In this document: positions 30,526 through 39,494 of the stretch, piece after piece
How the letters are laid out: each line of letters begins with the position of its first letter
How positions within the stretch are numbered: position 1 is the first letter of the stretch
Source: Mantamonas sphyraenae STR306
Lineage: Eukaryota; Protista; CRuMs
Assembly (NCBI GenBank): GCA_026936335.1
Contig: JAPMXV010000043.1
Coordinates: 1-64,000 of the forward strand
Reading direction: 5' to 3'
Length of the DNA stretch: 64,000 bases
Translations under genes and position numbers: made by a program
Notes under the pieces: generated by a model
The model's database searches: none
What the model saw: only the letters and a program-made list of their open reading frames with translations
What the model was told of the DNA's origin: nothing

Positions 30526-30771
30526 ATTTGGCGGAAATGCGCGTTTCTCCATTGTTTGGCAACATTCTCACGGCTCACTTGCCCCCATTAGCAAATGGAG
30601 CCTCGACCGCCCTCCGTTCCGTCCAGCATGTTGAGATGTGTTTGTGTCTGCGCGACGCGACGTGAGTGCGACCCCGTCCGGGATTCTCTGGACCGGTGCG
30701 CATGCAGGTCACGCGTGCAGACGTTGGTTTTTGGTTGTTGATTGGTATGGTGAGTGGGTTCGATGAGCGCT

Positions 30772-33700
30772 TTAGGCCTCGAGCTCGTCGATCTTCTCCA
30801 TCGTCTTCTTGATGTTGCGGTTGACGCGAGCCAGCTTGCGGTTGATGCGAGCGCGCAGGCGCGTGCATCGGCAAGTGAGGCGGTTGAGCCAGCCGGCGAA
30901 GCGGGCACGCAGGGACTTGTGGTGCTTGAGACGACGCTGGTGGGCGGCCTTCTTGGCAGCCTTCTGGCGACGCTCGTGCTTGCCGCAGCGCTTGTTGAAG
31001 CGATCCTCAATGCGTTCGTAGGCGCTGTTGTACTTACGGTACAGGTCCTTGTAACCGAGGATGTCGATGCGGTTGTCGATGCTGCGCAGCAGCTGGCGGG
31101 CCAGGCGTGCGTTGCGTCGGCAGTTGACATCGGCAAAGTCCTTCCTGAAGCGGTACCAGTGGAGGGCAATGCGCTTGGCGGCGTGGCGCTTGGCCGCACG
31201 CTCCACAGCAGTGGCGGAGCGCGTGGAGTGGCCCACGACGTAGTCGTAGTGGCAGGCCTTGCGCAGGTTCAGGTTGAAGATGCGCTTGCACGCACGTGCG
31301 GCGGCTCGCTTCTGGGCCTTGTTGCGGTACATGACCTTGGGCAGCTTGCCGCGCTGGTACGCGAGCTGCTTGAGGTAGTACGCCCAGGCGTGGGCCTTGT
31401 GCGCAAACAAGGTCTGCGACTTCTTGGCCACACCCCACGTGTGCGAGAAGGCGTCGTTGTAGCAACGACCCAGCCACTTCTTGGCACAGTTGGGGTACAC
31501 CTTGTTGTTGCGGCCAACCAGGTCGTGCTTCTTGGAGCCGTTCAGGCGACCACACAGACCGTTCAGCTTGTTCTTGTACACGCGCGGGTCAGCACGCAGG
31601 TACAGATTGCCGAAACGGCCGTGCTTGTGGACGACCACGCTCAGGCCCTTGTAGGCAAAGGTGACACGGGCGCCCTGACGAGTGGCCAGAACACCGGCGC
31701 CCAGGTTGTAGCGCTTGTTCTTGCGGCTGCTCAGGCCGGCGTGGATCTTGCCATTGACAATGACCTTGCCCTGGGCAGTGACCTCAAAGTGGACGGCGCC
31801 ACCACGGCCGATCTTGCCCGCAGCTGCGGAGAAGCGGCTAAAGGTGTGGCGCAGGGAGCCCTTGGCAAAGCGAGCCTGCACTTCCAGGTCGGTGGACTTG
31901 GCCATGGTGTACTCGCCAATGAGCTGCATCTCGTAGTACACTCCGTCAAAGGTGCGCACGTGCGGGTCGCCCGAGGCGTAGCACTGGCTGTACTTGGTGG
32001 GACGACGGTGCACCTTGCGCACGCGGCGCTTGCGGCGTTGCAGAGCACGCACGTTGGCCAGGTAGCGGGCACGCAGCTTGAGCAGACGTGCACGCACGGC
32101 CTTGGACAGGCGCTTGCTGCGCAGGCGCTTGTTCAACAGACGCAGGCGGCGCGCAAAGCGGCGAGCCTGGTGGCGACGCGAACGCGAGGCCTTGCGGGCC
32201 TTGCGACGTGCCAGACGACGACGCTTCTGGTTGAGGCGCGTGTTGGCGAGGGCACGGCGCGTGTTGGCCACACAGCGACGCGCCTTGTGCAGGGCAGCCT
32301 TGGCACGGGCCAGACGCGTGCGCAGAGTCTTGTTGGACTTGCGACGGCGCAGGGCCTTGGCCACCAGTCGCACACGGCGGGTCTGAGCACGCACAGAGTA
32401 CTGGCAGCGACGCAGGCGGAAGCGACGAGCACGCACAAGACGAGCGCGACGCTGAACGGCAGCGCGACGGCGAGTGCGACGCGAGATGCGGCGGCGGCGG
32501 CGCTTCTTGCCACCCTTCTTGGCAGCACGACGACGCTTGGCCAGCTTGCGGCGCCACGCGAGCACAGACTTGCGGTAGCGTGCGTTGAGCCACTTCTGGA
32601 TGCGCTTGCTGTTGCGGCGGACCACCTTGCGGCCAGCACGTGCCTTGGAGACAAGCAGGCGCAGGCGGCGGGTGTAGGCACGGATGCGAGCAAGGACCTT
32701 GGGGCTCTTGGTACGCAGGCGGCGCAGACGACGCAGGTTGCGAACGACGCGGCGGCGGATGACACGCGACTTGCGCAGGTTTCGCTTGGCAGCACGCAGC
32801 TTGGCACGCAACGAGACGACAAACTTGCGCTGCTGGGCACGGATGCGACGAGTGCGGCACTTGCGCGAGGCGTTACGCATGCGAGCGGTGACAAAGCAGC
32901 CACGCTTGAGGGCAGCACGCATCTTGACAAGGCGGCGACGCAGAGCCTTGGCACGGCGGCCAAAGCGACGAGCAGCCTTGCGGGCCTTGCGGACGCCACG
33001 CAGGCGACGGCGAGCACGACGCAGGGAAGCCAGAGCCTGGCGCTTGTGCTTGCGCAGACGCAGGCGCATGGCACGTGCACGAGCACGCTTGACACGCAGC
33101 ACACGGCGCTTGGCACGGCGTGCAGCCTTGGCGGCACGAGCACGCAGAGCACGCGCACGAGCACGCACACGGGCCATGGCAGTCACGGCGCGTGCCTTGC
33201 GCGTGCGCTTACGCACACGGCGCTGGAAGGCGCAGCTGCGGCTGACCTTGCGCCAATAGGCGGCAGTGTGCAGGCGGTTGAGGCGCAGGCCACGGGTGGA
33301 GCAGCGGCGACGCAGGAGCGTGTTGAGACGACGCAGCTGTGTGTTTGCGTTGCGTGCAGCCTTGCGCTGGCGACGAGCCAGACGGATCAGATGGCGACGC
33401 GAACGTGCGTTGCGAGAACGCTTGGCACGAGAGCGAGCCACACGGGCGCGAGCGATGGCGTTGCGAGCAGCGCGACGGAGGCGGGCGACCAGACGGTGGT
33501 TCTTGCGAGCCACGTGGCGCGCGCGAGCCTTCCAGACGCGAGCACGGCGACGCACAGCGCGGCGGCGCAGGCGCAGACGCTTCAGGGTCTTTGCCAGCTT
33601 GGCACGCTTGGCACGGCGACGAGCAATCTTGGCACGGGTGGCACGCAGGGCGCGAGCCTTGGCCAAGAGGATGGCCTTGCGCTGGCGAGCACGGCGACCG

Positions 33701-36700
33701 GCGATAAGGGCACGGTGCTGCACGCGACGCATGGCACGCTCGGCACGGATGCGCTTGGCCAGCTTGCGGCGCAGGGCACGCATGCGACGGAGGCGGCTGT
33801 TGAGACGCTTGCGGCGCAGGCGCAGGCGCAGGTTGTGGCGCAGGGCACGCTTCTTCCAGGAAGCACGGCGCTTGGCACGCAGGCGACGAAGACGCAGCTG
33901 GAAGGCCAGCTTGGCCTTGTTGTCACGCGTGCGCACAAGTCGGCGCAGGGAACGGATCTTGGTGCGGAGCAGCGCACGGCGGGCCTGGCGAGCGCGGCGG
34001 CGACGGCGGTGAGCGGCCTTGATGGCACGCTTGCAAGAGGCGGCATAGGCACGCCAGACACTGCCGGCGTTGCTGCGGGGCACCTTGCGCGTGCAGTGGC
34101 TGCGGATGGCACGGCGGGCGTAGATGGTGGCGTTGCGGATGTCCCAGTACAGGGTGCGGGCACGGCGCATGGTGCGGCGGGCCAGAGCCTGGCGACGGCG
34201 AGCAGCGCGACGAGCAGCAGAGCCACGTGCACTGCGATGCTGACGCACACGCAGGGCATGGAGACGACGGGCGGCAGCGTAGCGCTTGGAAGCTGCACGC
34301 AGGACCTTGTTCAGGGAACGCAGACGCAAGCGCAGGGCACGCGTGGTGACCAGACGGGCCTTGCGGATGGCGTTGCGCATCTGCTTGCGCTTGCGAGCAG
34401 CCACGTAGCGACGCGAACGGTTGCGCGTGCACAGAGCGTACACGGCATAGTTCAGGGTCTGGTTCTTGCGGCGAGCCTGACGCCTGCAGGCCTTGAGGAT
34501 GCGCTGGGCAGTCTTCTTGGCAAGCTGGGCCACAGCACGTGCGGCAGCCTTGATGTGCTTGGCACGCTGGGCACGGCGGTGGCGGATGCGTCGACGAGCA
34601 ACGCGGGCCATCTTGTTGAGCGAGTCACGCACGCAGTTGTAGAAGCGGACGGGCATGGCGCTCTTGCAGCGGCGCTGAAGGCGGCGGCGGCGGTGCAGGG
34701 GCACACGACGCAGCAGGGCCGAGGCCTTGGTGCGCCAGATGCGGCTGGTGCCGGCCGGGGCGGGCTTGCGGAACCAACAGAGGCCTGTGGAACGGGCAGC
34801 CACACCGTAGTTGGTGTACACATACACGTTCCAGTAGCCTCCGTAGGCCTTGTTGTAGTGGGCCACAACACGCACGGAGCGCTTGCCGGCACCCACCTTG
34901 TACGTCTTCTTGAAAGACTTGTTGGCCAGACGAGTGGCCTTGCCCTTGTACACAATGTCCACCTTGCCGTTGAGACCACGGTTGCCAAAGCGCTTGTGCA
35001 GCTTGAGGGTGGTAAACACAGTGAGCTGCTTGAATCGGAACAGCACCATCTTGCCCGTCTTGGAGTAGACGTTGAACGCCTTGTTGTTGAACGAGCGGTA
35101 GTGCGGGTCGCCCGTAGAGCGGCACGTCACGGCCTTCTTGTTGCGCTTGCGGCGCGCCAGGAAGCGCTTGCGAGCGGCAATGGCCAGGGCACGGCGGCGG
35201 CCAAGCTCATTGTTGACACGGTTGCGCACGCAGGCAAAGAAGCCCGCGGCAACGAGACGCACTCCGCGGCCGTAGCGAGCGCGGCAGGCACGGCGGATGG
35301 CACCACGCAGGCGGCGGGAAGCCACACGACGCAGCTGGGCAGAGGCCTTCTTCAGCAGACGACGGTGCATGGCACGGCGCTGACGCAGAGTGTTGCGCAC
35401 AACGGCGGTCAGCTTGCGCGACAGATCGTACACGCAGTTGTAGTAGCTGGCATGGGTCTTGCGCGAGCGACACATGCGCACGGCACGGCGACGCTGGGCA
35501 CGGGTCATGGCACGCAGCAGCTTCTGGGACTTGGCGGTCCACTTGGCGCTGTTGACATTGGTGCCCTGGCGCGAGTGGCACAGGCCAGAGGAAATGGCAG
35601 CCACGTTGGCACGCGCATACACGTACACGTTGTAGTAGCCACGGGTTTGACCACGGTTGGCAGCAGCCAGCTTCTGGTACTGCAGCACGACACGCACGCG
35701 GCGTCCGTTGGTGCGGAAGCGGAAGGTCTTTGCGCCCTTGCCCTTGCGCACGAGCAGCTTGTAGCTGCGCGGGCCACGCGTCTGACCGTCCTGAGTGTAC
35801 ACGGCCTTGGTGCGTCCGTGTTGCACCGTCACACGCGAGTTGAGGCCACGCTTGGCATGGTACTTGCTGTAGCGAATGTGGGTGGTGATCTTGAATCCCG
35901 GCAGCTCAAACAGCACGTGGTCGCCCGTCTTGCCGTAAATGTTGTACGACTTGCCAGCAAAGGTGCGGTAGTGGGGATCGCCCGTGGAGCGGCAGTGCAG
36001 CTCGCGAGCGGGCTTCTTGCGCACCTTGCGCGGCAGCTTGGTGCGCTTCTTCTGACCGCGGCGGCGAGCAGCGGCATTGTTGCGGCGGATGTACACACGC
36101 ACGCGGTTGCGCACGCACAGGTAGCGGCGATACACATGCTTGCCGTACTTGCGGCTGCACAGGCGCGACACCTGGGCGCGTTGCACCTTGGTGACGCGGG
36201 CAACCAGCTTGGCAATCTGCTTCATCAGGCGGGCGTTGTTGCGCGCCTTGTTCGCCTTGCGCTTCAGACCACGAGCAAAGTCCACGTAGCAGTTGTAGCG
36301 TGAGGCTGGGCTGCGTCGCACGCCACACAGGCGCTGAGCAGCGGCGCGCTTCTTGGCGGCAATCGTCGCCAGGACCTTGGCCGAGCGGCGATCCCACACC
36401 GTGGTGTTGGTCACCGTGCGACCACGGCCAGACACGCACAGGCCCGAGGCCACGCGAGCCACGTTGCCACGCACCGTCACGTACACATTGTAATAGCCGT
36501 GAGCCATGGGACGCTTGTCATCCTCATCCTCATCCTCATCCTCATCCTTGACCTCCTCGCTCTCGGCCTCGCTCTCGGCATCTTCCTGCTCCTCATCCTG
36601 TTCCTCGTCCTGGACGCGGCCACGACGGAAGCGACGGCAGAAGCGCTGGTCTTCCTCGCTGTCGTAGTCCTCGAGCTTGTAGTCCGAGTCGAGCACATCG

Positions 36701-39370
36701 ACGGCATCACCGGCCTCGGCGGCGGCATCCATCTCATCCTGGTCCTGCACACGACGGCCACGGAGACGCCTCCAGGCACGAGCGCGAGCACGTGCGTTGG
36801 CACGTGCACAGGCACGCTTGGCGCGCGCACGAATGGCAGCCTGAGCACGGGCACGGCGGCGGCGAGCGGCGGCTGCACGCTTGGCAGCACGGCGCTTCTT
36901 GGCAGCCAGCAGTTTGGCTGCACGACGAGACGCGCGCTTCTTGCGCATGGCCTTGCCGTACGACGTCATCACGTACTGCAAGTTGAGGTGAACAACCTCG
37001 CCGCCCACCTTGATGGCGTAGGTCGCGCGCGTGCCCTTCAGGCGGTATGCCTTGGGACCCGTGTAGCGGCCCTGCTCGCTGTACAGAGCGAGCGTGTTGC
37101 CGTTGCGCACCTCAATCTGAGAGTTGACGCCGCGCGAGCCCCACTGGCCCTTCAGCTTGATCACGCTGTACACCGTCAGCTTGCCGTAGCGGAACAGCAC
37201 ACGGCGGCCCTGGTAGTTGTACACGTTGAAAGAACGTCCAAAGAACGAGCGGTAGTGCGGGTCACCCGTCGAGCGGCACGTCACACGCTTGGACACGTGC
37301 TTGCGTGCTGCGCGGCGGCGACGAAGCTTGCGACGCGTTGCGTTGCGCGCACGGATCGCGGCAGTCTGCTTGCGGTGTTCAGCACGCACACACACATAGA
37401 ACGCCTTGCGTGTGGCAGCACGGCAACGTCGGTTCACGCTCTTGCGCTGACCCTTGGTCATGCGGCGCAACAGCCACGCGGCCAGGTTGCTGTAGCGGCG
37501 CGCGTTGGCGTCGTTCTTCTTGTCGTTTGCTCGCTTGCTGCCAGCCTTCTTACCACCGGCGTGACGTGCACGGCGCACGCACAGGAAGTAGCGGAATGTG
37601 TTCTTGGCATGCTTGCGACATGCCATGCGGATCGTCGCACGGCGAGCTCCGGTCAGCTTCTTCAACAGACGCGCAGCCTTCTTTGCAAAATGCTTGCGAG
37701 CACGGCGTCGCGCACGCGCAGACTTTTTGCCGATGCGGCTCACGCGAGCACGCACACGCTGCACGCAGCGGAAGTAGCCCAGGCTGTTCGCCTGGCGACA
37801 CTTCTTGCCAATCAGGATGCGGTGTGCCTTGCCTACTGTACCCAGCAGCTTCGTGGCGCGGTTCAGCCAGTAGCGCGAGTCCTTCGGGCGGCCGTTCTTC
37901 ACCAGGCAGCGGTAGTAGCTGCCTGCGTTGCGGCGATGCTTGCGGCACAGACCCTTCACACGACGGCGCTCGTTGCCCTTGAGGCTGCGCAGAATTGCAC
38001 GCACGTTGTGCTTGCGGCGGCGCACGCGGCGACGCGCGCGACGAGTGTGGCGACGGTTGGCGCGGCCCATGCCACGCAGGTTGTCCACCACGCAGTTGTA
38101 GAACTTGGCCGGGTTCTTGCGCACGTTGTTGCAGCGTGCACGCACCTTGGTCTGTTCTGCCTTGCTACGACGTCGCAGCTTCGCCTCGGCGCGAATTGCA
38201 AACGTGTGGTTATGTGCATACTTGCCGTCCTTCGACGCGCACAGGCCACGCGTTGCCGCGTTGGCGCGCTTGTTCTGCGTCACGTACACGTTGTAGTAGC
38301 CCCAGCCCTTCGGCATGTGCTTGTGCACGTGCTTGCGGTTCAGGCGGTGGTACGTCAGGCGCACGTTCACCGAATCCGCACCCACCTTGAACGTGTGGTT
38401 TGCCTCCGTGTTCTTGTTGCGGTTGAAGCGCTGTGATGTTTATCACCCTCCTCCGTGTCAGTCTCTTGCACCTCTGCACTGCACGGGCGGAAAGAAAAAC
38501 GGTGGCCGTTCCACAGAGGGTCTCAAAATTCCACACAGGATTGCTTCCGGCCGCCCTTCCGCAAGCCACGGAGCACGCATCCTGTCGGGAACCTTCACAT
38601 CCCTCCGCAGACACACAGCACACCATCACCGGAACACGCGCTCTGTACATGGGCTCTCCTTGCACGTGCACGCGCCCCCTTTCTCTTTGGCAAAAACCAC
38701 AATCTCACTCCCAAGGCTACGTACCAGATTCTTCGGGCCCGAGTAGCGGCCCACAGTCGAGTAGTGCGCACGGCGGCCCTTGTACACCACCGTCACCGCG
38801 GTGTTCACACCACGGTTCGACCACCACAGGCTGTGAGTCAGACGAGTGTACACAGCCAGGTTGCCTCGCTTGAAAAGCAGCATCTGGCCCTGCATTCCGT
38901 AAACGTCGTAGCGCTTGCCATACAGCGAGGTGTAATGGGGATCACCCGTCGAACGGCATTGCGCAGCATCAGCGCTGTGTGTTCCAACGCCCAAAACACG
39001 CCCGTTGCTCGTCAGTCTCTCAGAGTAACCCCGTCCCCAGATGTGCCCTGGAAAGGCTGCGAAAAAAAAAAAGGCTGCCTCCGTCCCACTCACTCCCAAC
39101 TTACTCCACGTCCTTCACTTCCTCGTCCACAGCGGTCACGCCCTCGACATCAGCCTGTTCTCCAGACATCTTTTGATCGAGAATGCGCTCCACCTCTGCG
39201 TCCTCCTCCGCCATCTCCTCCTCTTCGGTTTCCACATCGTCCACAAGAGGTTGCGCCTCGGCGGCTGCTGCCGCTGACTTTTCGTCAGCAGGTACAGCCT
39301 CCTCAGCCACAACACAGCTGCTCAAGCCAATGATTGCGAGAATCAGCAGAGCAAGAGCTGCAGCCTTCAT
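30772..39370 (-). CDS. Giant secreted Arg/Lys/Ala-rich protein (~2724 aa) with five VWD-like GDPH modules; introns 38975-39104 and 38431-38724
   Basis: Signal peptide MKAAALALLILAIIGLSSCVVA; GTAAGT..ACACAG and GTACGT..TCACAG introns give a continuous frame; C(R/Y)(S/A)(T/S)GDPH five times, each followed later by GLC; the last module is typical VWD (GDPHVRTFDG...GLCG). Confidence 0.88.
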
Positions 39371-39494
39371 GTTGATGGTTGGGTTTTCTTGAGTTTGGTT
39401 GGCTGCGCTGTGACGCCCGCCCCTTGCCAACCCAACCAGACCCGCACCAGCTCCCCTCCGTACAGCAACACCCCACATCACGCGCGCACACATC

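What the first reader, a model, noticed from the sequence alone, without database searches (positions are those of the whole stretch)
30772..39370. Giant secreted polycation built from five GDPH (self-cleaving VWD-like) modules: candidate self-processing, self-cross-linking extracellular material
Seen: a ~2724-aa ORF with a signal peptide; GDPH motifs at about 38935, 37260, 35975, 35105 and 31965; several hundred residues of R/K/A-dominated helical sequence; Asp/Glu almost absent outside two acidic islands. Established: GD/PH in VWD domains of gel-forming mucins, FCGBP and RGM autocleaves at Asp-Pro, and the resulting anhydride can react with nucleophiles. Inference: this is a polyprotein that cuts itself into extremely cationic subunits and may cross-link through its many Lys. 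Possible roles are an extrusome filament, adhesive/gliding trail, scale or cyst matrix, silica/polyanion template or bacteria-binding net. I do not recognise this protamine-like secreted VWD architecture from any described family.
Basis: partly seen in the sequence, partly recalled or inferred. Interest (0 to 1): 0.85.

Follow-up and report, generated by a model that had tools for sequence, protein, structure and literature searches.

The report
Giant secreted polycationic VWD-repeat protein
A gliding marine flagellate (almost certainly Mantamonas sphyraenae) encodes a 2,724-residue secreted protein with about +700 net charge, built from five mucin-type VWD modules with intact self-cleavage motifs. 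It belongs to an uncharacterised gene family whose codon usage resembles that of actin and tubulin.

Summary
A three-exon minus-strand gene (39370..30772) encodes a signal peptide, an acidic pro-region, four short GDPH modules, a 794-residue Arg-rich stretch and one Pfam-grade VWD. The protein is 22% Arg and 9% Lys, with net charge about +706.

The short modules are true but divergent VWD domains. AlphaFold gave pLDDT 90, and Foldseek matched MUC5AC, MUC2, VWF, FCGBP and RGM.

The frame is coding:
- Its codon adaptation resembles actin, tubulin and RPL3 (0.66, against 0.26-0.36 for neighbouring genes and 0.28 for the antisense ORF).
- The genome holds five or six Arg/Lys-rich paralogues.
- Mantamonas plastica transcripts encode homologues of up to 2,964 residues with 27% Arg.

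GDPH is intact in 35 of 35 modules. Cysteine spacing and parity match FCGBP, whose cleaved fragments stay disulfide-tethered.

My best reading is a highly expressed secreted polycationic glue or binder for substratum or bacterial prey. That role is inferred. No RNA run or localisation data were available.

Smaller basic relatives exist in Heterolobosea (Naegleria, Willaertia, Percolomonas), and none has been characterised. The scan had already flagged the paralogues on other contigs of this genome. I rate it a new variant of a known kind.

The parts
39105..39370 (-). Exon 1: ATG at 39370, signal peptide (aa 1-22, 39305-39370), then an acidic pro-region (net -23 up to the first cleavage site)
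   Evidence: The GTAAGT donor begins at 39104, exactly at the in-frame stop.
38975..39104 (-). Intron 1 (130 nt, GT..AG). Two alternative in-frame acceptors would start exon 2 at 39016 or 39007.
   Evidence: No RNA was available to choose between the acceptors.
38725..38974 (-). Exon 2: N-terminal half of VWD-like module 1, including the first GDPH (38935-38946)
   Evidence: (38725-38958 matches module positions 1-78, E 2e-13).
38431..38724 (-). Intron 2 (294 nt, GTACGT..CAG), lying in a loop of module 1
   Evidence: The frame carries stops, and the module alignment resumes at 38430.
30772..38430 (-). Exon 3 (7659 nt including the stop): the rest of the protein
   Evidence: GC3 0.78; CGY 97% of Arg codons; AAG 99% of Lys codons.
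36436..37278 (-). Module 2 (GDPH at 37255-37266), with a ~170-aa insertion in a loop. The insertion includes the acidic island at ~36517-36744.
   Evidence: (36967-37278 matches positions 1-108; 36412-36513 matches positions 114-147), and (TCATCC x5 repeat).
35578..35994 (-). Module 3 (GDPH at 35971-35982), the module that was folded
   Evidence: pLDDT 89.8, all-beta; Foldseek: MUC5AC, MUC2, VWF, FCGBP and RGM VWD; best E 8.5e-7.
34777..35124 (-). Module 4 (GDPH at 35101-35112)
35125..35577 (-). Spacer after module 3: basic helices stapled by two Cys pairs, the first carrying the YYNCVYD motif. Equivalent spacers lie at 37279-38238, 35995-36435 and 34366-34776.
   Evidence: W, C, C, D, C invariant in 18 units from two species; helices, pLDDT up to 96. 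C8 homology is unproven.
31984..34365 (-). 794-aa Arg-rich region (about 33% R, virtually no D/E), amphipathic-helix periodicity, occasional Cys pairs
   Evidence: hydrophobic moment peak at 100 degrees, z 3.5; only composition is conserved with paralogues; no tandem DNA repeat.
31504..31983 (-). Canonical VWD domain (GDPH at 31960-31971, with TFDG and GLCG motifs)
   Evidence: (PF00094, E 5.7e-18, 66.2 bits, profile 1-155).
30775..31503 (-). Basic C-terminal tail (~240 aa, 8 Cys) with no transmembrane or GPI-like hydrophobic end

Best explanation
This is a real and probably very highly expressed gene of a mantamonad. It encodes a secreted, disulfide-stapled polycation. Shown: a signal peptide, then a 78-residue acidic pro-piece, then four compact VWD domains. 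Each of the four is followed by basic helical hairpins pinned by Cys pairs. Next come a 794-residue Arg-rich amphipathic-helical stretch, a canonical VWD and a basic tail. Inferred: in the ER each VWD folds and its GD|PH bond hydrolyses autocatalytically, as in FCGBP, mucins and RGM. The Cys five residues upstream of each cleaved Asp stays bonded to the GLC Cys of the same module. The product would therefore be one covalently tethered chain of six fragments (net charges -23, +124, +64, +70, +401, +69), not free subunits. Cleavage would serve to stabilise or mature the domains. Once secreted, the +700 charge would make it an electrostatic binder of polyanionic surfaces. My most likely role is a cationic glue that attaches the gliding cell to the substratum or to its own acidic mucilage, and/or sticks to bacterial prey. 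This parallels the VWD/GDPH proteins found in diatom adhesive trails.
For: Gene and frame: Pfam VWD at 66 bits; the five GDPH modules read in two exon frames that two GT..AG introns join into one; CAI 0.66 against 0.26-0.36 for neighbours, 0.72-0.83 for actin, tubulin and RPL3, and 0.28 for the antisense ORF; T-ending preferred codons are shared with the highly expressed set. Fold: AF2 pLDDT 89.8, with GDPH between strands 1 and 2; Foldseek probability 1.0 to solved VWD domains. Family: 33 module matches in the genome, on giant ORFs with R 15-25%. M. plastica transcripts P0152 (2964 aa, R 27%, five GDPH) and P0002 (signal peptide, acidic region, then GDPH module in one ORF) show the same design. 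Paralogue C6 also has a signal peptide and acidic block. Constraint on the motif: GDPH is intact in 35 of 35 modules found by a GDPH-independent signature. Oxidising compartment: 50 Cys in the mature chain; a perfectly covarying extra Cys pair in the module alignment. Tether: Cys spacing of 138 against 139 for FCGBP C472-C611 (PMC8267560); fragment Cys parity 1/even/even/even/even/odd. Role: VWD/GDPH proteins occur in diatom adhesive trails and other bioadhesives (PMC7335047; bioRxiv 10.1101/2023.03.06.531300). Mantamonas is a surface-gliding bacterivore (PMC10492846). In the Arg-rich region only composition is conserved, as expected for a bulk-charge material.
Against: There is no transcript, proteomic or localisation evidence for this gene; no RNA run was on record and the laid runs were DNA contigs. 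The signal peptide was judged by rule, not by SignalP. Cleavage is unproven: the Gln that assists cleavage in FCGBP D10 appears by manual sequence alignment to be replaced by an invariant Tyr, and the TFDG Asp is missing in the short modules. How a cell moves +700 charges through the ER is unexplained. The 23 net negative charges of the pro-piece cannot neutralise them, and no polyanionic partner was identified. The adhesive role rests on analogy only. Unverified scan notes report many other 'signal peptide - acidic - cationic' families in this genome, which fits an antimicrobial or granule-cargo theme equally well.
Confidence: 0.5

Rival explanations
1. It is a prey-killing polyprotein. The precursor is delivered to food vacuoles or secreted onto bacteria. 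Kexin/furin-type convertases cut it at its many dibasic sites into cationic amphipathic helical peptides that permeabilise bacterial membranes. The VWD modules and acidic pro-piece serve only for folding, sorting and self-protection.
For: 264 dibasic and 40 R-x-[KR]-R sites, and amphipathic-helix periodicity (z 3.5 at 100 degrees) in the Arg-rich region. The acidic pro-piece plus cationic body resembles defensin and major-basic-protein precursors (my own knowledge). The relatives with a named source belong to bacterivorous mantamonads (M. plastica) and heteroloboseans. Unverified scan notes list many signal-acidic-cationic families in this genome.
Against: Conserved Cys-pair hairpins and 35 of 35 intact VWD modules point to a large folded, disulfide-linked product rather than small peptides. 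No peptide-like repeat unit or conserved processing site was seen. Sizes of 2,700-3,300 aa are unusual for antimicrobial-peptide precursors.
Confidence: 0.2
2. It is the matrix or cargo of a regulated secretory granule or extrusome. The polycation is condensed with a polyanion (polyphosphate or an acidic glycan), using VWD-mediated packing as in Weibel-Palade bodies and mucin granules. It expands on discharge.
For: Solved VWD assemblies form pH- and Ca-dependent storage tubules (the PDB matches include MUC2 and VWF tubules). Codon usage suggests very high expression. The extreme charge demands a counter-ion partner.
Against: The Mantamonas genome paper that was searched does not mention extrusomes. 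The short modules lack C8, TIL and E domains and apparently the Ca-site Asp. No partner polyanion gene was identified.
Confidence: 0.13
3. It is a protamine-like intracellular nucleic-acid or chromatin binder, and the apparent signal peptide is spurious.
For: The composition resembles protamines and Arg-rich RNA binders.
Against: A signal peptide followed by an acidic block recurs in paralogue C6 and in M. plastica P0002. VWD is an extracellular fold. The Cys count is even and one Cys pair covaries.
Confidence: 0.03
4. It is not a real protein. The Arg-rich frame is a by-product of G+C-rich DNA, or of a gene on the plus strand (ORF 30754-36303).
For: The antisense frame is also open for 1849 codons. 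The Arg-rich region has no sequence-specific similarity to paralogues once composition is corrected.
Against: The antisense ORF has CAI 0.28 and no Pfam hit. The minus frame has CAI 0.66. VWD modules flank the Arg-rich region in frame. M. plastica transcripts carry homologous Arg-rich ORFs. All paralogues keep the same composition.
Confidence: 0.02

Closest known systems
FCGBP (IgGFc-binding protein) of vertebrates
   Same: A secreted giant with many tandem VWD domains, nearly all carrying GDPH. The Cys five residues before the Asp and a Cys about 139 residues later tether the cleaved fragments. FCGBP-like proteins are the best non-mantamonad hits of the module profile.
   Different: There is no FCGBP_N, C8, TIL or E domain. 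The modules are about 145 aa and Cys-poor. FCGBP is acidic to neutral (R+K about 8%), whereas this protein is 32% R+K. The spacers here are basic helical hairpins.
Gel-forming mucins and von Willebrand factor D assemblies
   Same: The VWD beta-sandwich fold (Foldseek E down to 8.5e-7, TM about 0.6), the GLC(G) motif, and the secretory route.
   Different: There is no PTS mucin domain (S 4%, T 4%, P 0.9%), no CK or CysD domain, and no detectable C8 or TIL. Only a 12-column 'YxxCVYD' motif aligns to C8 (hhalign probability 9.9%).
Diatom adhesive-trail GDPH/vWD proteins (Amphora Ac629 and relatives; expanded in Seminavis)
   Same: Secreted GDPH-bearing proteins of a surface-gliding protist, located in adhesive trails (as cited).
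   Different: Their homology to the mantamonad modules was not tested. The primary paper (Lachnit 2019) was not held, so its definition of the domain could not be read; secondary sources call it diatom-specific. [quoted passage not shown]
Uncharacterised basic VWD proteins of Heterolobosea and of metagenomes (Naegleria gruberi XP_002671385, Willaertia magna KAL9649995, Percolomonas MMETSP0759)
   Same: Signal peptide, GDPH VWD, a Cys-pair motif ending in C-[VI]-x-D, then a Lys/Arg-rich helical tail. R+K is 20-29% and D+E is low.
   Different: They have one or two modules and 280-930 aa, and are mostly Lys-rich rather than Arg-rich. Those inspected show no acidic pro-piece. None has a known function.
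Polycationic secreted materials by analogy: sandcastle-worm cement proteins, eosinophil major basic protein with its acidic pro-piece
   Same: A secreted polycation. The acidic pro-piece recalls the major-basic-protein precursor; the need for a polyanionic partner recalls the worm cement. This comparison is from my own knowledge and was not tested.
   Different: No sequence or fold relationship. Those proteins are far smaller and lack VWD.

Membership tests
VWD domain (Pfam PF00094) | Sequence score above the Pfam gathering threshold (22.9 bits) | tested here: met
   C-terminal module: 66.2 bits, E 5.7e-18, profile positions 1-155; 51.5 bits in the genome scan.
VWD domain (Pfam PF00094), short modules | Sequence score above the Pfam gathering threshold | tested here: inconclusive
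   8 of 21 short modules hit VWD at E<1 (best 5.3e-6). Module 3 scores 19.9 bits, below the 22.9 cut-off, and only the N-terminal half aligns.
VWD domain, short modules | VWD beta-sandwich fold with GDPH in the loop between the first two strands | tested here: met
   AF2 pLDDT 89.8, strands at 2-5 and 10-12 flanking GDPH. The top 40+ Foldseek PDB hits are all VWD domains, probability 1.0.
GDPH-autocleaving VWD (FCGBP, MUC2, RGM type) | Intact G-D-P-H with the Asp and His that mutagenesis shows are required | tested here: met
   35 of 35 modules. Requirements taken from PMC10880436.
GDPH-autocleaving VWD | Actual hydrolysis of the Asp-Pro bond | not testable with these tools
   Needs recombinant protein or mass spectrometry. 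By my manual sequence alignment, the assisting Gln of FCGBP D10 is replaced here by an invariant Tyr.
GDPH-autocleaving VWD | Inter-fragment disulfide across the cleavage site | tested here: inconclusive
   Both Cys are invariant, with spacing 138 against 139 in FCGBP. Fragment Cys parity fits. The bond itself was not observable.
D assembly (VWD-C8-TIL-E) of mucins, VWF and FCGBP | A C8 domain following VWD | tested here: not met
   No Pfam C8 hit at E<5. hhalign probability 9.9% over 12 columns. Foldseek alignments run into the C8 region only at rmsd about 16 A.
D assembly / gel-forming mucin | TIL domain, PTS domain, FCGBP_N | tested here: not met
   No such Pfam hits. The composition is poor in S, T and P.
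RGM (repulsive guidance molecule) | RGM_C above threshold (27 bits) | tested here: not met
   19 bits, over residues 2132-2170 only.
Diatom GDPH-domain adhesive trail proteins | Homology to the diatom GDPH domain; presence in trails | not tested
   The primary paper (Lachnit 2019) was not held, and no diatom sequences were compared.

The most novel reading that the evidence does not exclude
Mantamonads, and in simpler form heteroloboseans, make a previously unknown class of extracellular material. It would consist of abundantly expressed giant poly-arginine proteins that auto-process at every VWD module. Their charge, and possibly the Asp-anhydride formed at GD|PH (as ITIH heavy chains use it on chondroitin sulfate), would let them form a covalently reinforced complex coacervate with acidic glycans or bacterial surfaces. 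That material would be the cell's gliding adhesive or prey-capture glue.
Probability: 0.15. Interest if true: 0.85.

Novelty: new variant of a known kind. Interest (0 to 1): 0.68.

Why it matters
Three reasons.

1. No characterised secreted protein that I know of combines a mucin/FCGBP-type multi-VWD architecture with roughly +700 net charge. Six genes of this kind, with codon usage like actin, imply a major cell product in a deep-branching eukaryote (CRuMs) whose cell biology is almost unknown.

2. It extends FCGBP-like tandem GDPH-VWD architecture well outside animals. Earlier work found VWD in only a few protists, and never in repeats.

3. The 35 of 35 conserved GDPH motifs offer a clean, non-animal system for asking what Asp-Pro autoproteolysis is for.

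If the protein is an adhesive or a bacteria-binding net, it is also a natural polyarginine biomaterial.

Tried and rejected
- **RNA evidence.** The look-up of sequencing runs found four holders, none on record as RNA. The single read-laying run showed contigs colinear with the genome (introns not skipped where contigs cover them), so these are DNA. Splice junctions and expression therefore remain inferred.
- **C8 homology of the spacers.** Pfam gave nothing. hhalign against seven FCGBP-type C8 domains aligned only the YxxCVYD motif, at probability 9.9%. Foldseek on the VWD+spacer model extended into C8 only at rmsd about 16 A. I treat this as unproven.
- **Sequence conservation of the Arg-rich region.** blastp with composition correction gave no hit. 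Without correction, scores were barely above shuffled controls. I rejected the idea of a conserved domain array there; only occasional Cys-pair motifs recur, and those were seen by eye.
- **Tandem DNA repeats.** They do not explain the Arg-rich region: none were found.
- **Antisense ORF 30754-36303.** Rejected as a gene.
- **Literature.** There were no hits on the Naegleria homologue's identifiers, and Lachnit 2019 was not held.
- **Handling of the joined model.** The joined three-exon model was assembled only inside local scripts, for counting composition, charge and Cys parity. It was not sent to any search or fold tool. All searches used exon-wise or locus references.


Full report
**Identity of the DNA.** The window encodes eukaryotic proteins: FANCI, C2H2 zinc fingers, WD40 and LRR/ankyrin. 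Its assembly has 25,061,354 bases in 78 contigs and about 59-60% G+C. These figures match the FALCON assembly of Mantamonas sphyraenae, which has 25.06 Mb, 78 contigs and 59.19% GC (PMC10492846). The closest homologues of the gene come from the EukProt transcriptome of Mantamonas plastica. I therefore take the organism to be M. sphyraenae, a marine gliding, bacterivorous flagellate of the CRuMs supergroup. This is an inference, not a label supplied by a tool.

**Gene model.**
- The minus strand is open from 38385 to 30772.
- An ATG at 39370 opens a frame encoding a signal peptide and an acidic stretch. That frame ends in a stop overlapping a GTAAGT donor at 39104.
- Three in-frame acceptors are possible, with exon 2 starting at 39016, 39007 or 38974.
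- Exon 2 ends at 38725 before GTACGT. Exon 3 starts at 38430 after CAG.
- Exon 2 covers module positions 1-78, and exon 3 resumes with the remainder of the module. The second intron therefore sits in a loop of module 1.
- The same order, signal peptide then acidic block then first module or basic body, occurs without introns in paralogue C6 and in the M. plastica transcript-derived ORF P0002. This supports the splice model by analogy.
- No RNA run was on record.
- The joined model was built only inside scripts, for counting. Every search and fold used exon-wise references.

**Composition.**
- The model has 2724 aa and net charge +706. Its only hydrophobic 19-mers are in the signal peptide. It has 50 Cys after the signal peptide and 11 N-glycosylation sequons.
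- Exon 3 is 22.4% Arg, 9.4% Lys and 14.1% Ala.
- D+E is 2.2% outside the two acidic islands, which are the pro-piece and an insertion in module 2 at about 36517-36744.

**The frame is coding.**
- Codon usage is extreme and matches a reference set of actin, tubulin and RPL3 taken from the same genome. CGC+CGT make up 97% of Arg codons, AAG 99% of Lys codons and CAG 95% of Gln codons, GGG is absent, and the T-ending GCT, GGT and CGT codons are enriched.
- CAI is 0.66. Six neighbouring ORFs give 0.26-0.36, the reference genes 0.72-0.83 and the antisense ORF 0.28. The paralogues give 0.57-0.76. I read this as translational selection, meaning high expression. That is an inference.
- The long plus-strand ORF 30754-36303 has no Pfam hit. 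It is the expected shadow of a stop-poor, CGY/GCC-rich frame.

**The modules are VWD domains.**
- The last module is a textbook VWD (PF00094, 66 bits).
- The four short modules (about 145 aa) fall below or near threshold by sequence: 8 of 21 family members hit VWD, best E 5.3e-6.
- An AlphaFold model built from 21 paralogous modules is confident (pLDDT 89.8, pTM 0.85) and all-beta, with GDPH between strands 1 and 2.
- Foldseek against the PDB returns only VWD domains at the top: MUC5AC, MUC2, MUC5B, VWF, FCGBP, Cypridina luciferase and RGMB. E goes down to 8.5e-7, with probability 1.0.

**Spacers.**
- After each module come basic helices with two Cys pairs. W, C, C, D and C are invariant across 18 units from two species.
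- In the unit model these helices reach pLDDT about 96.
- The first pair carries YYNCVYD, which resembles the central motif of the C8 domain at the equivalent position. Pfam finds no C8 and hhalign gives only 9.9% probability over 12 columns.
- A degenerate C8 is therefore a lead, not a finding.

**Family.**
- The module finds 33 matches in the genome. They lie on three giant ORFs on contig C50 (3306, 3200 and 2864 aa, with 6, 8 and 4 GDPH), on ORFs on C6 (1154, 793 and 788 aa) and on C59 (866 aa).
- All of these are Arg/Lys-rich, with R 10-25% and K 5-10%.
- Two ordinary-composition VWD proteins lie on C31 and C57.
- A profile search of 1.84 billion representatives gave 209 hits. The best are M. 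plastica transcripts, followed by animal FCGBP, tectorin and mucin-like proteins.
- Interspersed among those are about 25 small basic proteins (R+K 20-29%, D+E often below 5%). They have a signal peptide directly followed by a GDPH VWD and a basic tail.
- The named sources for these are Naegleria gruberi, Willaertia magna and Percolomonas. The rest are unnamed EukProt, MMETSP or metagenome sequences.
- Lang et al. 2016 had noted VWD in a few protists such as Naegleria, never together with C8 or TIL (PMC4948705).
- M. plastica P0152 is a transcript-derived ORF of 2964 aa with 27% Arg and five GDPH modules, preceded by 1300 Arg-rich residues. The polycationic frame is therefore transcribed in a sister species.

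**The Arg-rich region.**
- It has no tandem DNA repeats.
- With composition correction it has no similarity to the Arg-rich parts of paralogues. Without correction it scores barely above shuffled controls.
- Its hydrophobic moment peaks at 100 degrees (z 3.5), which indicates amphipathic helices.
- What is conserved is composition and charge, as expected if bulk electrostatics is the function.

**Cleavage and its consequence.**
- GDPH is intact in 35 of 35 modules detected with a signature that ignores those four residues, although the modules are only 38-50% identical to one another.
- In FCGBP D10 the Asp and the His are required for cleavage, and a nearby Gln helps (PMC10880436). By manual sequence alignment that Gln position is an invariant Tyr here.
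- In FCGBP all GDPH sites are cut in the ER. Each pair of fragments stays joined by one disulfide, C472-C611, and the Asp-anhydride was found hydrolysed rather than cross-linked (PMC8267560).
- The mantamonad modules keep exactly these two Cys, five residues before the Asp and 138 residues later in the GLC motif.
- The six predicted fragments have 1, 12, 8, 6, 14 and 9 Cys. That is the parity expected for one bridging disulfide per site.
- A further Cys pair is either present in both positions or absent from both across the modules. This indicates a second disulfide and an oxidising compartment.
- I conclude that the protein probably matures as one tethered chain, with the acidic pro-piece still attached, and not as free cationic subunits.

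**Function.** Nothing here localises the protein. Several points argue for an extracellular polyanion-binding material: the secretory signal, the extracellular fold, the disulfide pattern, inferred high expression, composition-only conservation and the huge positive charge. VWD/GDPH proteins are components of diatom adhesive trails and of other bioadhesives, and Mantamonas glides on surfaces. I therefore favour an adhesive or capture glue. The rivals are a precursor of cationic antibacterial peptides and a granule or extrusome matrix. Unverified notes from this scan list many other 'signal peptide - acidic - cationic' gene families in the genome, which keeps the antimicrobial or cargo reading alive.

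**Verdict.** The finding is a new variant of a known kind, namely multi-VWD secreted proteins. It is of considerable interest but functionally unresolved.

Noticed in passing
window 30754-36303 (+): A 1849-codon antisense ORF rich in Ala, Leu, Thr and Gly, with no Pfam hit and CAI 0.28. It is a shadow of the stop-poor coding frame, and every paralogue has a similar shadow ORF.
   Followed up: yes
G000 contig C50: about 41-52 kb, 71-84 kb and 125-134 kb (L019-L024); C6 28-36 kb (L025); C59 66-69 kb (L026): Five to six paralogous giant Arg/Lys-rich GDPH-module genes, three of them clustered on one 274-kb contig. C50b has eight modules, several nearly identical, which suggests recent internal duplication. 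The three adjacent C6 ORFs may be one gene broken by introns or frameshifts.
   Followed up: partly
G000 C31:393.3-396.1 kb (L014, L018) and C57:28.0-30.8 kb (L015, L017): VWD proteins of ordinary composition (R 4-9%, D+E 6-12%) with GDPH. They could be partners or ancestors of the polycationic family.
   Followed up: no
window 39371-39494: Only 124 bp separate the ATG of the polycation gene (minus strand) from the start of the FANCI ORF (plus strand). This is a very short divergent promoter between a gene inferred to be highly expressed and a DNA-repair gene.
   Followed up: no
window 37234-37267, 35612-35643 and 35095-35126: Other contigs in the sequencing runs match only about 30 nt here. 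This is the DNA encoding the CRSTGDPHY motif, so the motif is conserved among paralogues at nucleotide level.
   Followed up: partly
window 34849-39447: Thirteen single-base differences and a 1-nt deletion (38601, inside intron 2) separate the window from contigs of runs X1 and X2 (the only other indel, at 34932, is in run X3). This looks like allelic or haplotype variation. The one indel in runs X1/X2 falls in the predicted intron, consistent with the exon model.
   Followed up: no
window 36518-36579: A perfect TCATCC x5 repeat and a 12-nt x2 repeat encode the Asp/Glu run of the acidic island. This is the only simple repeat in the gene. The reads tool skipped 36511-36558 as a repeat.
   Followed up: partly
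G000 C37:52.7-76.2 kb: Three near-identical actin genes lie within 25 kb, and there are several identical beta-tubulin-type copies on C37 and C39. Multi-copy housekeeping genes are notable in a 25-Mb genome.
   Followed up: no
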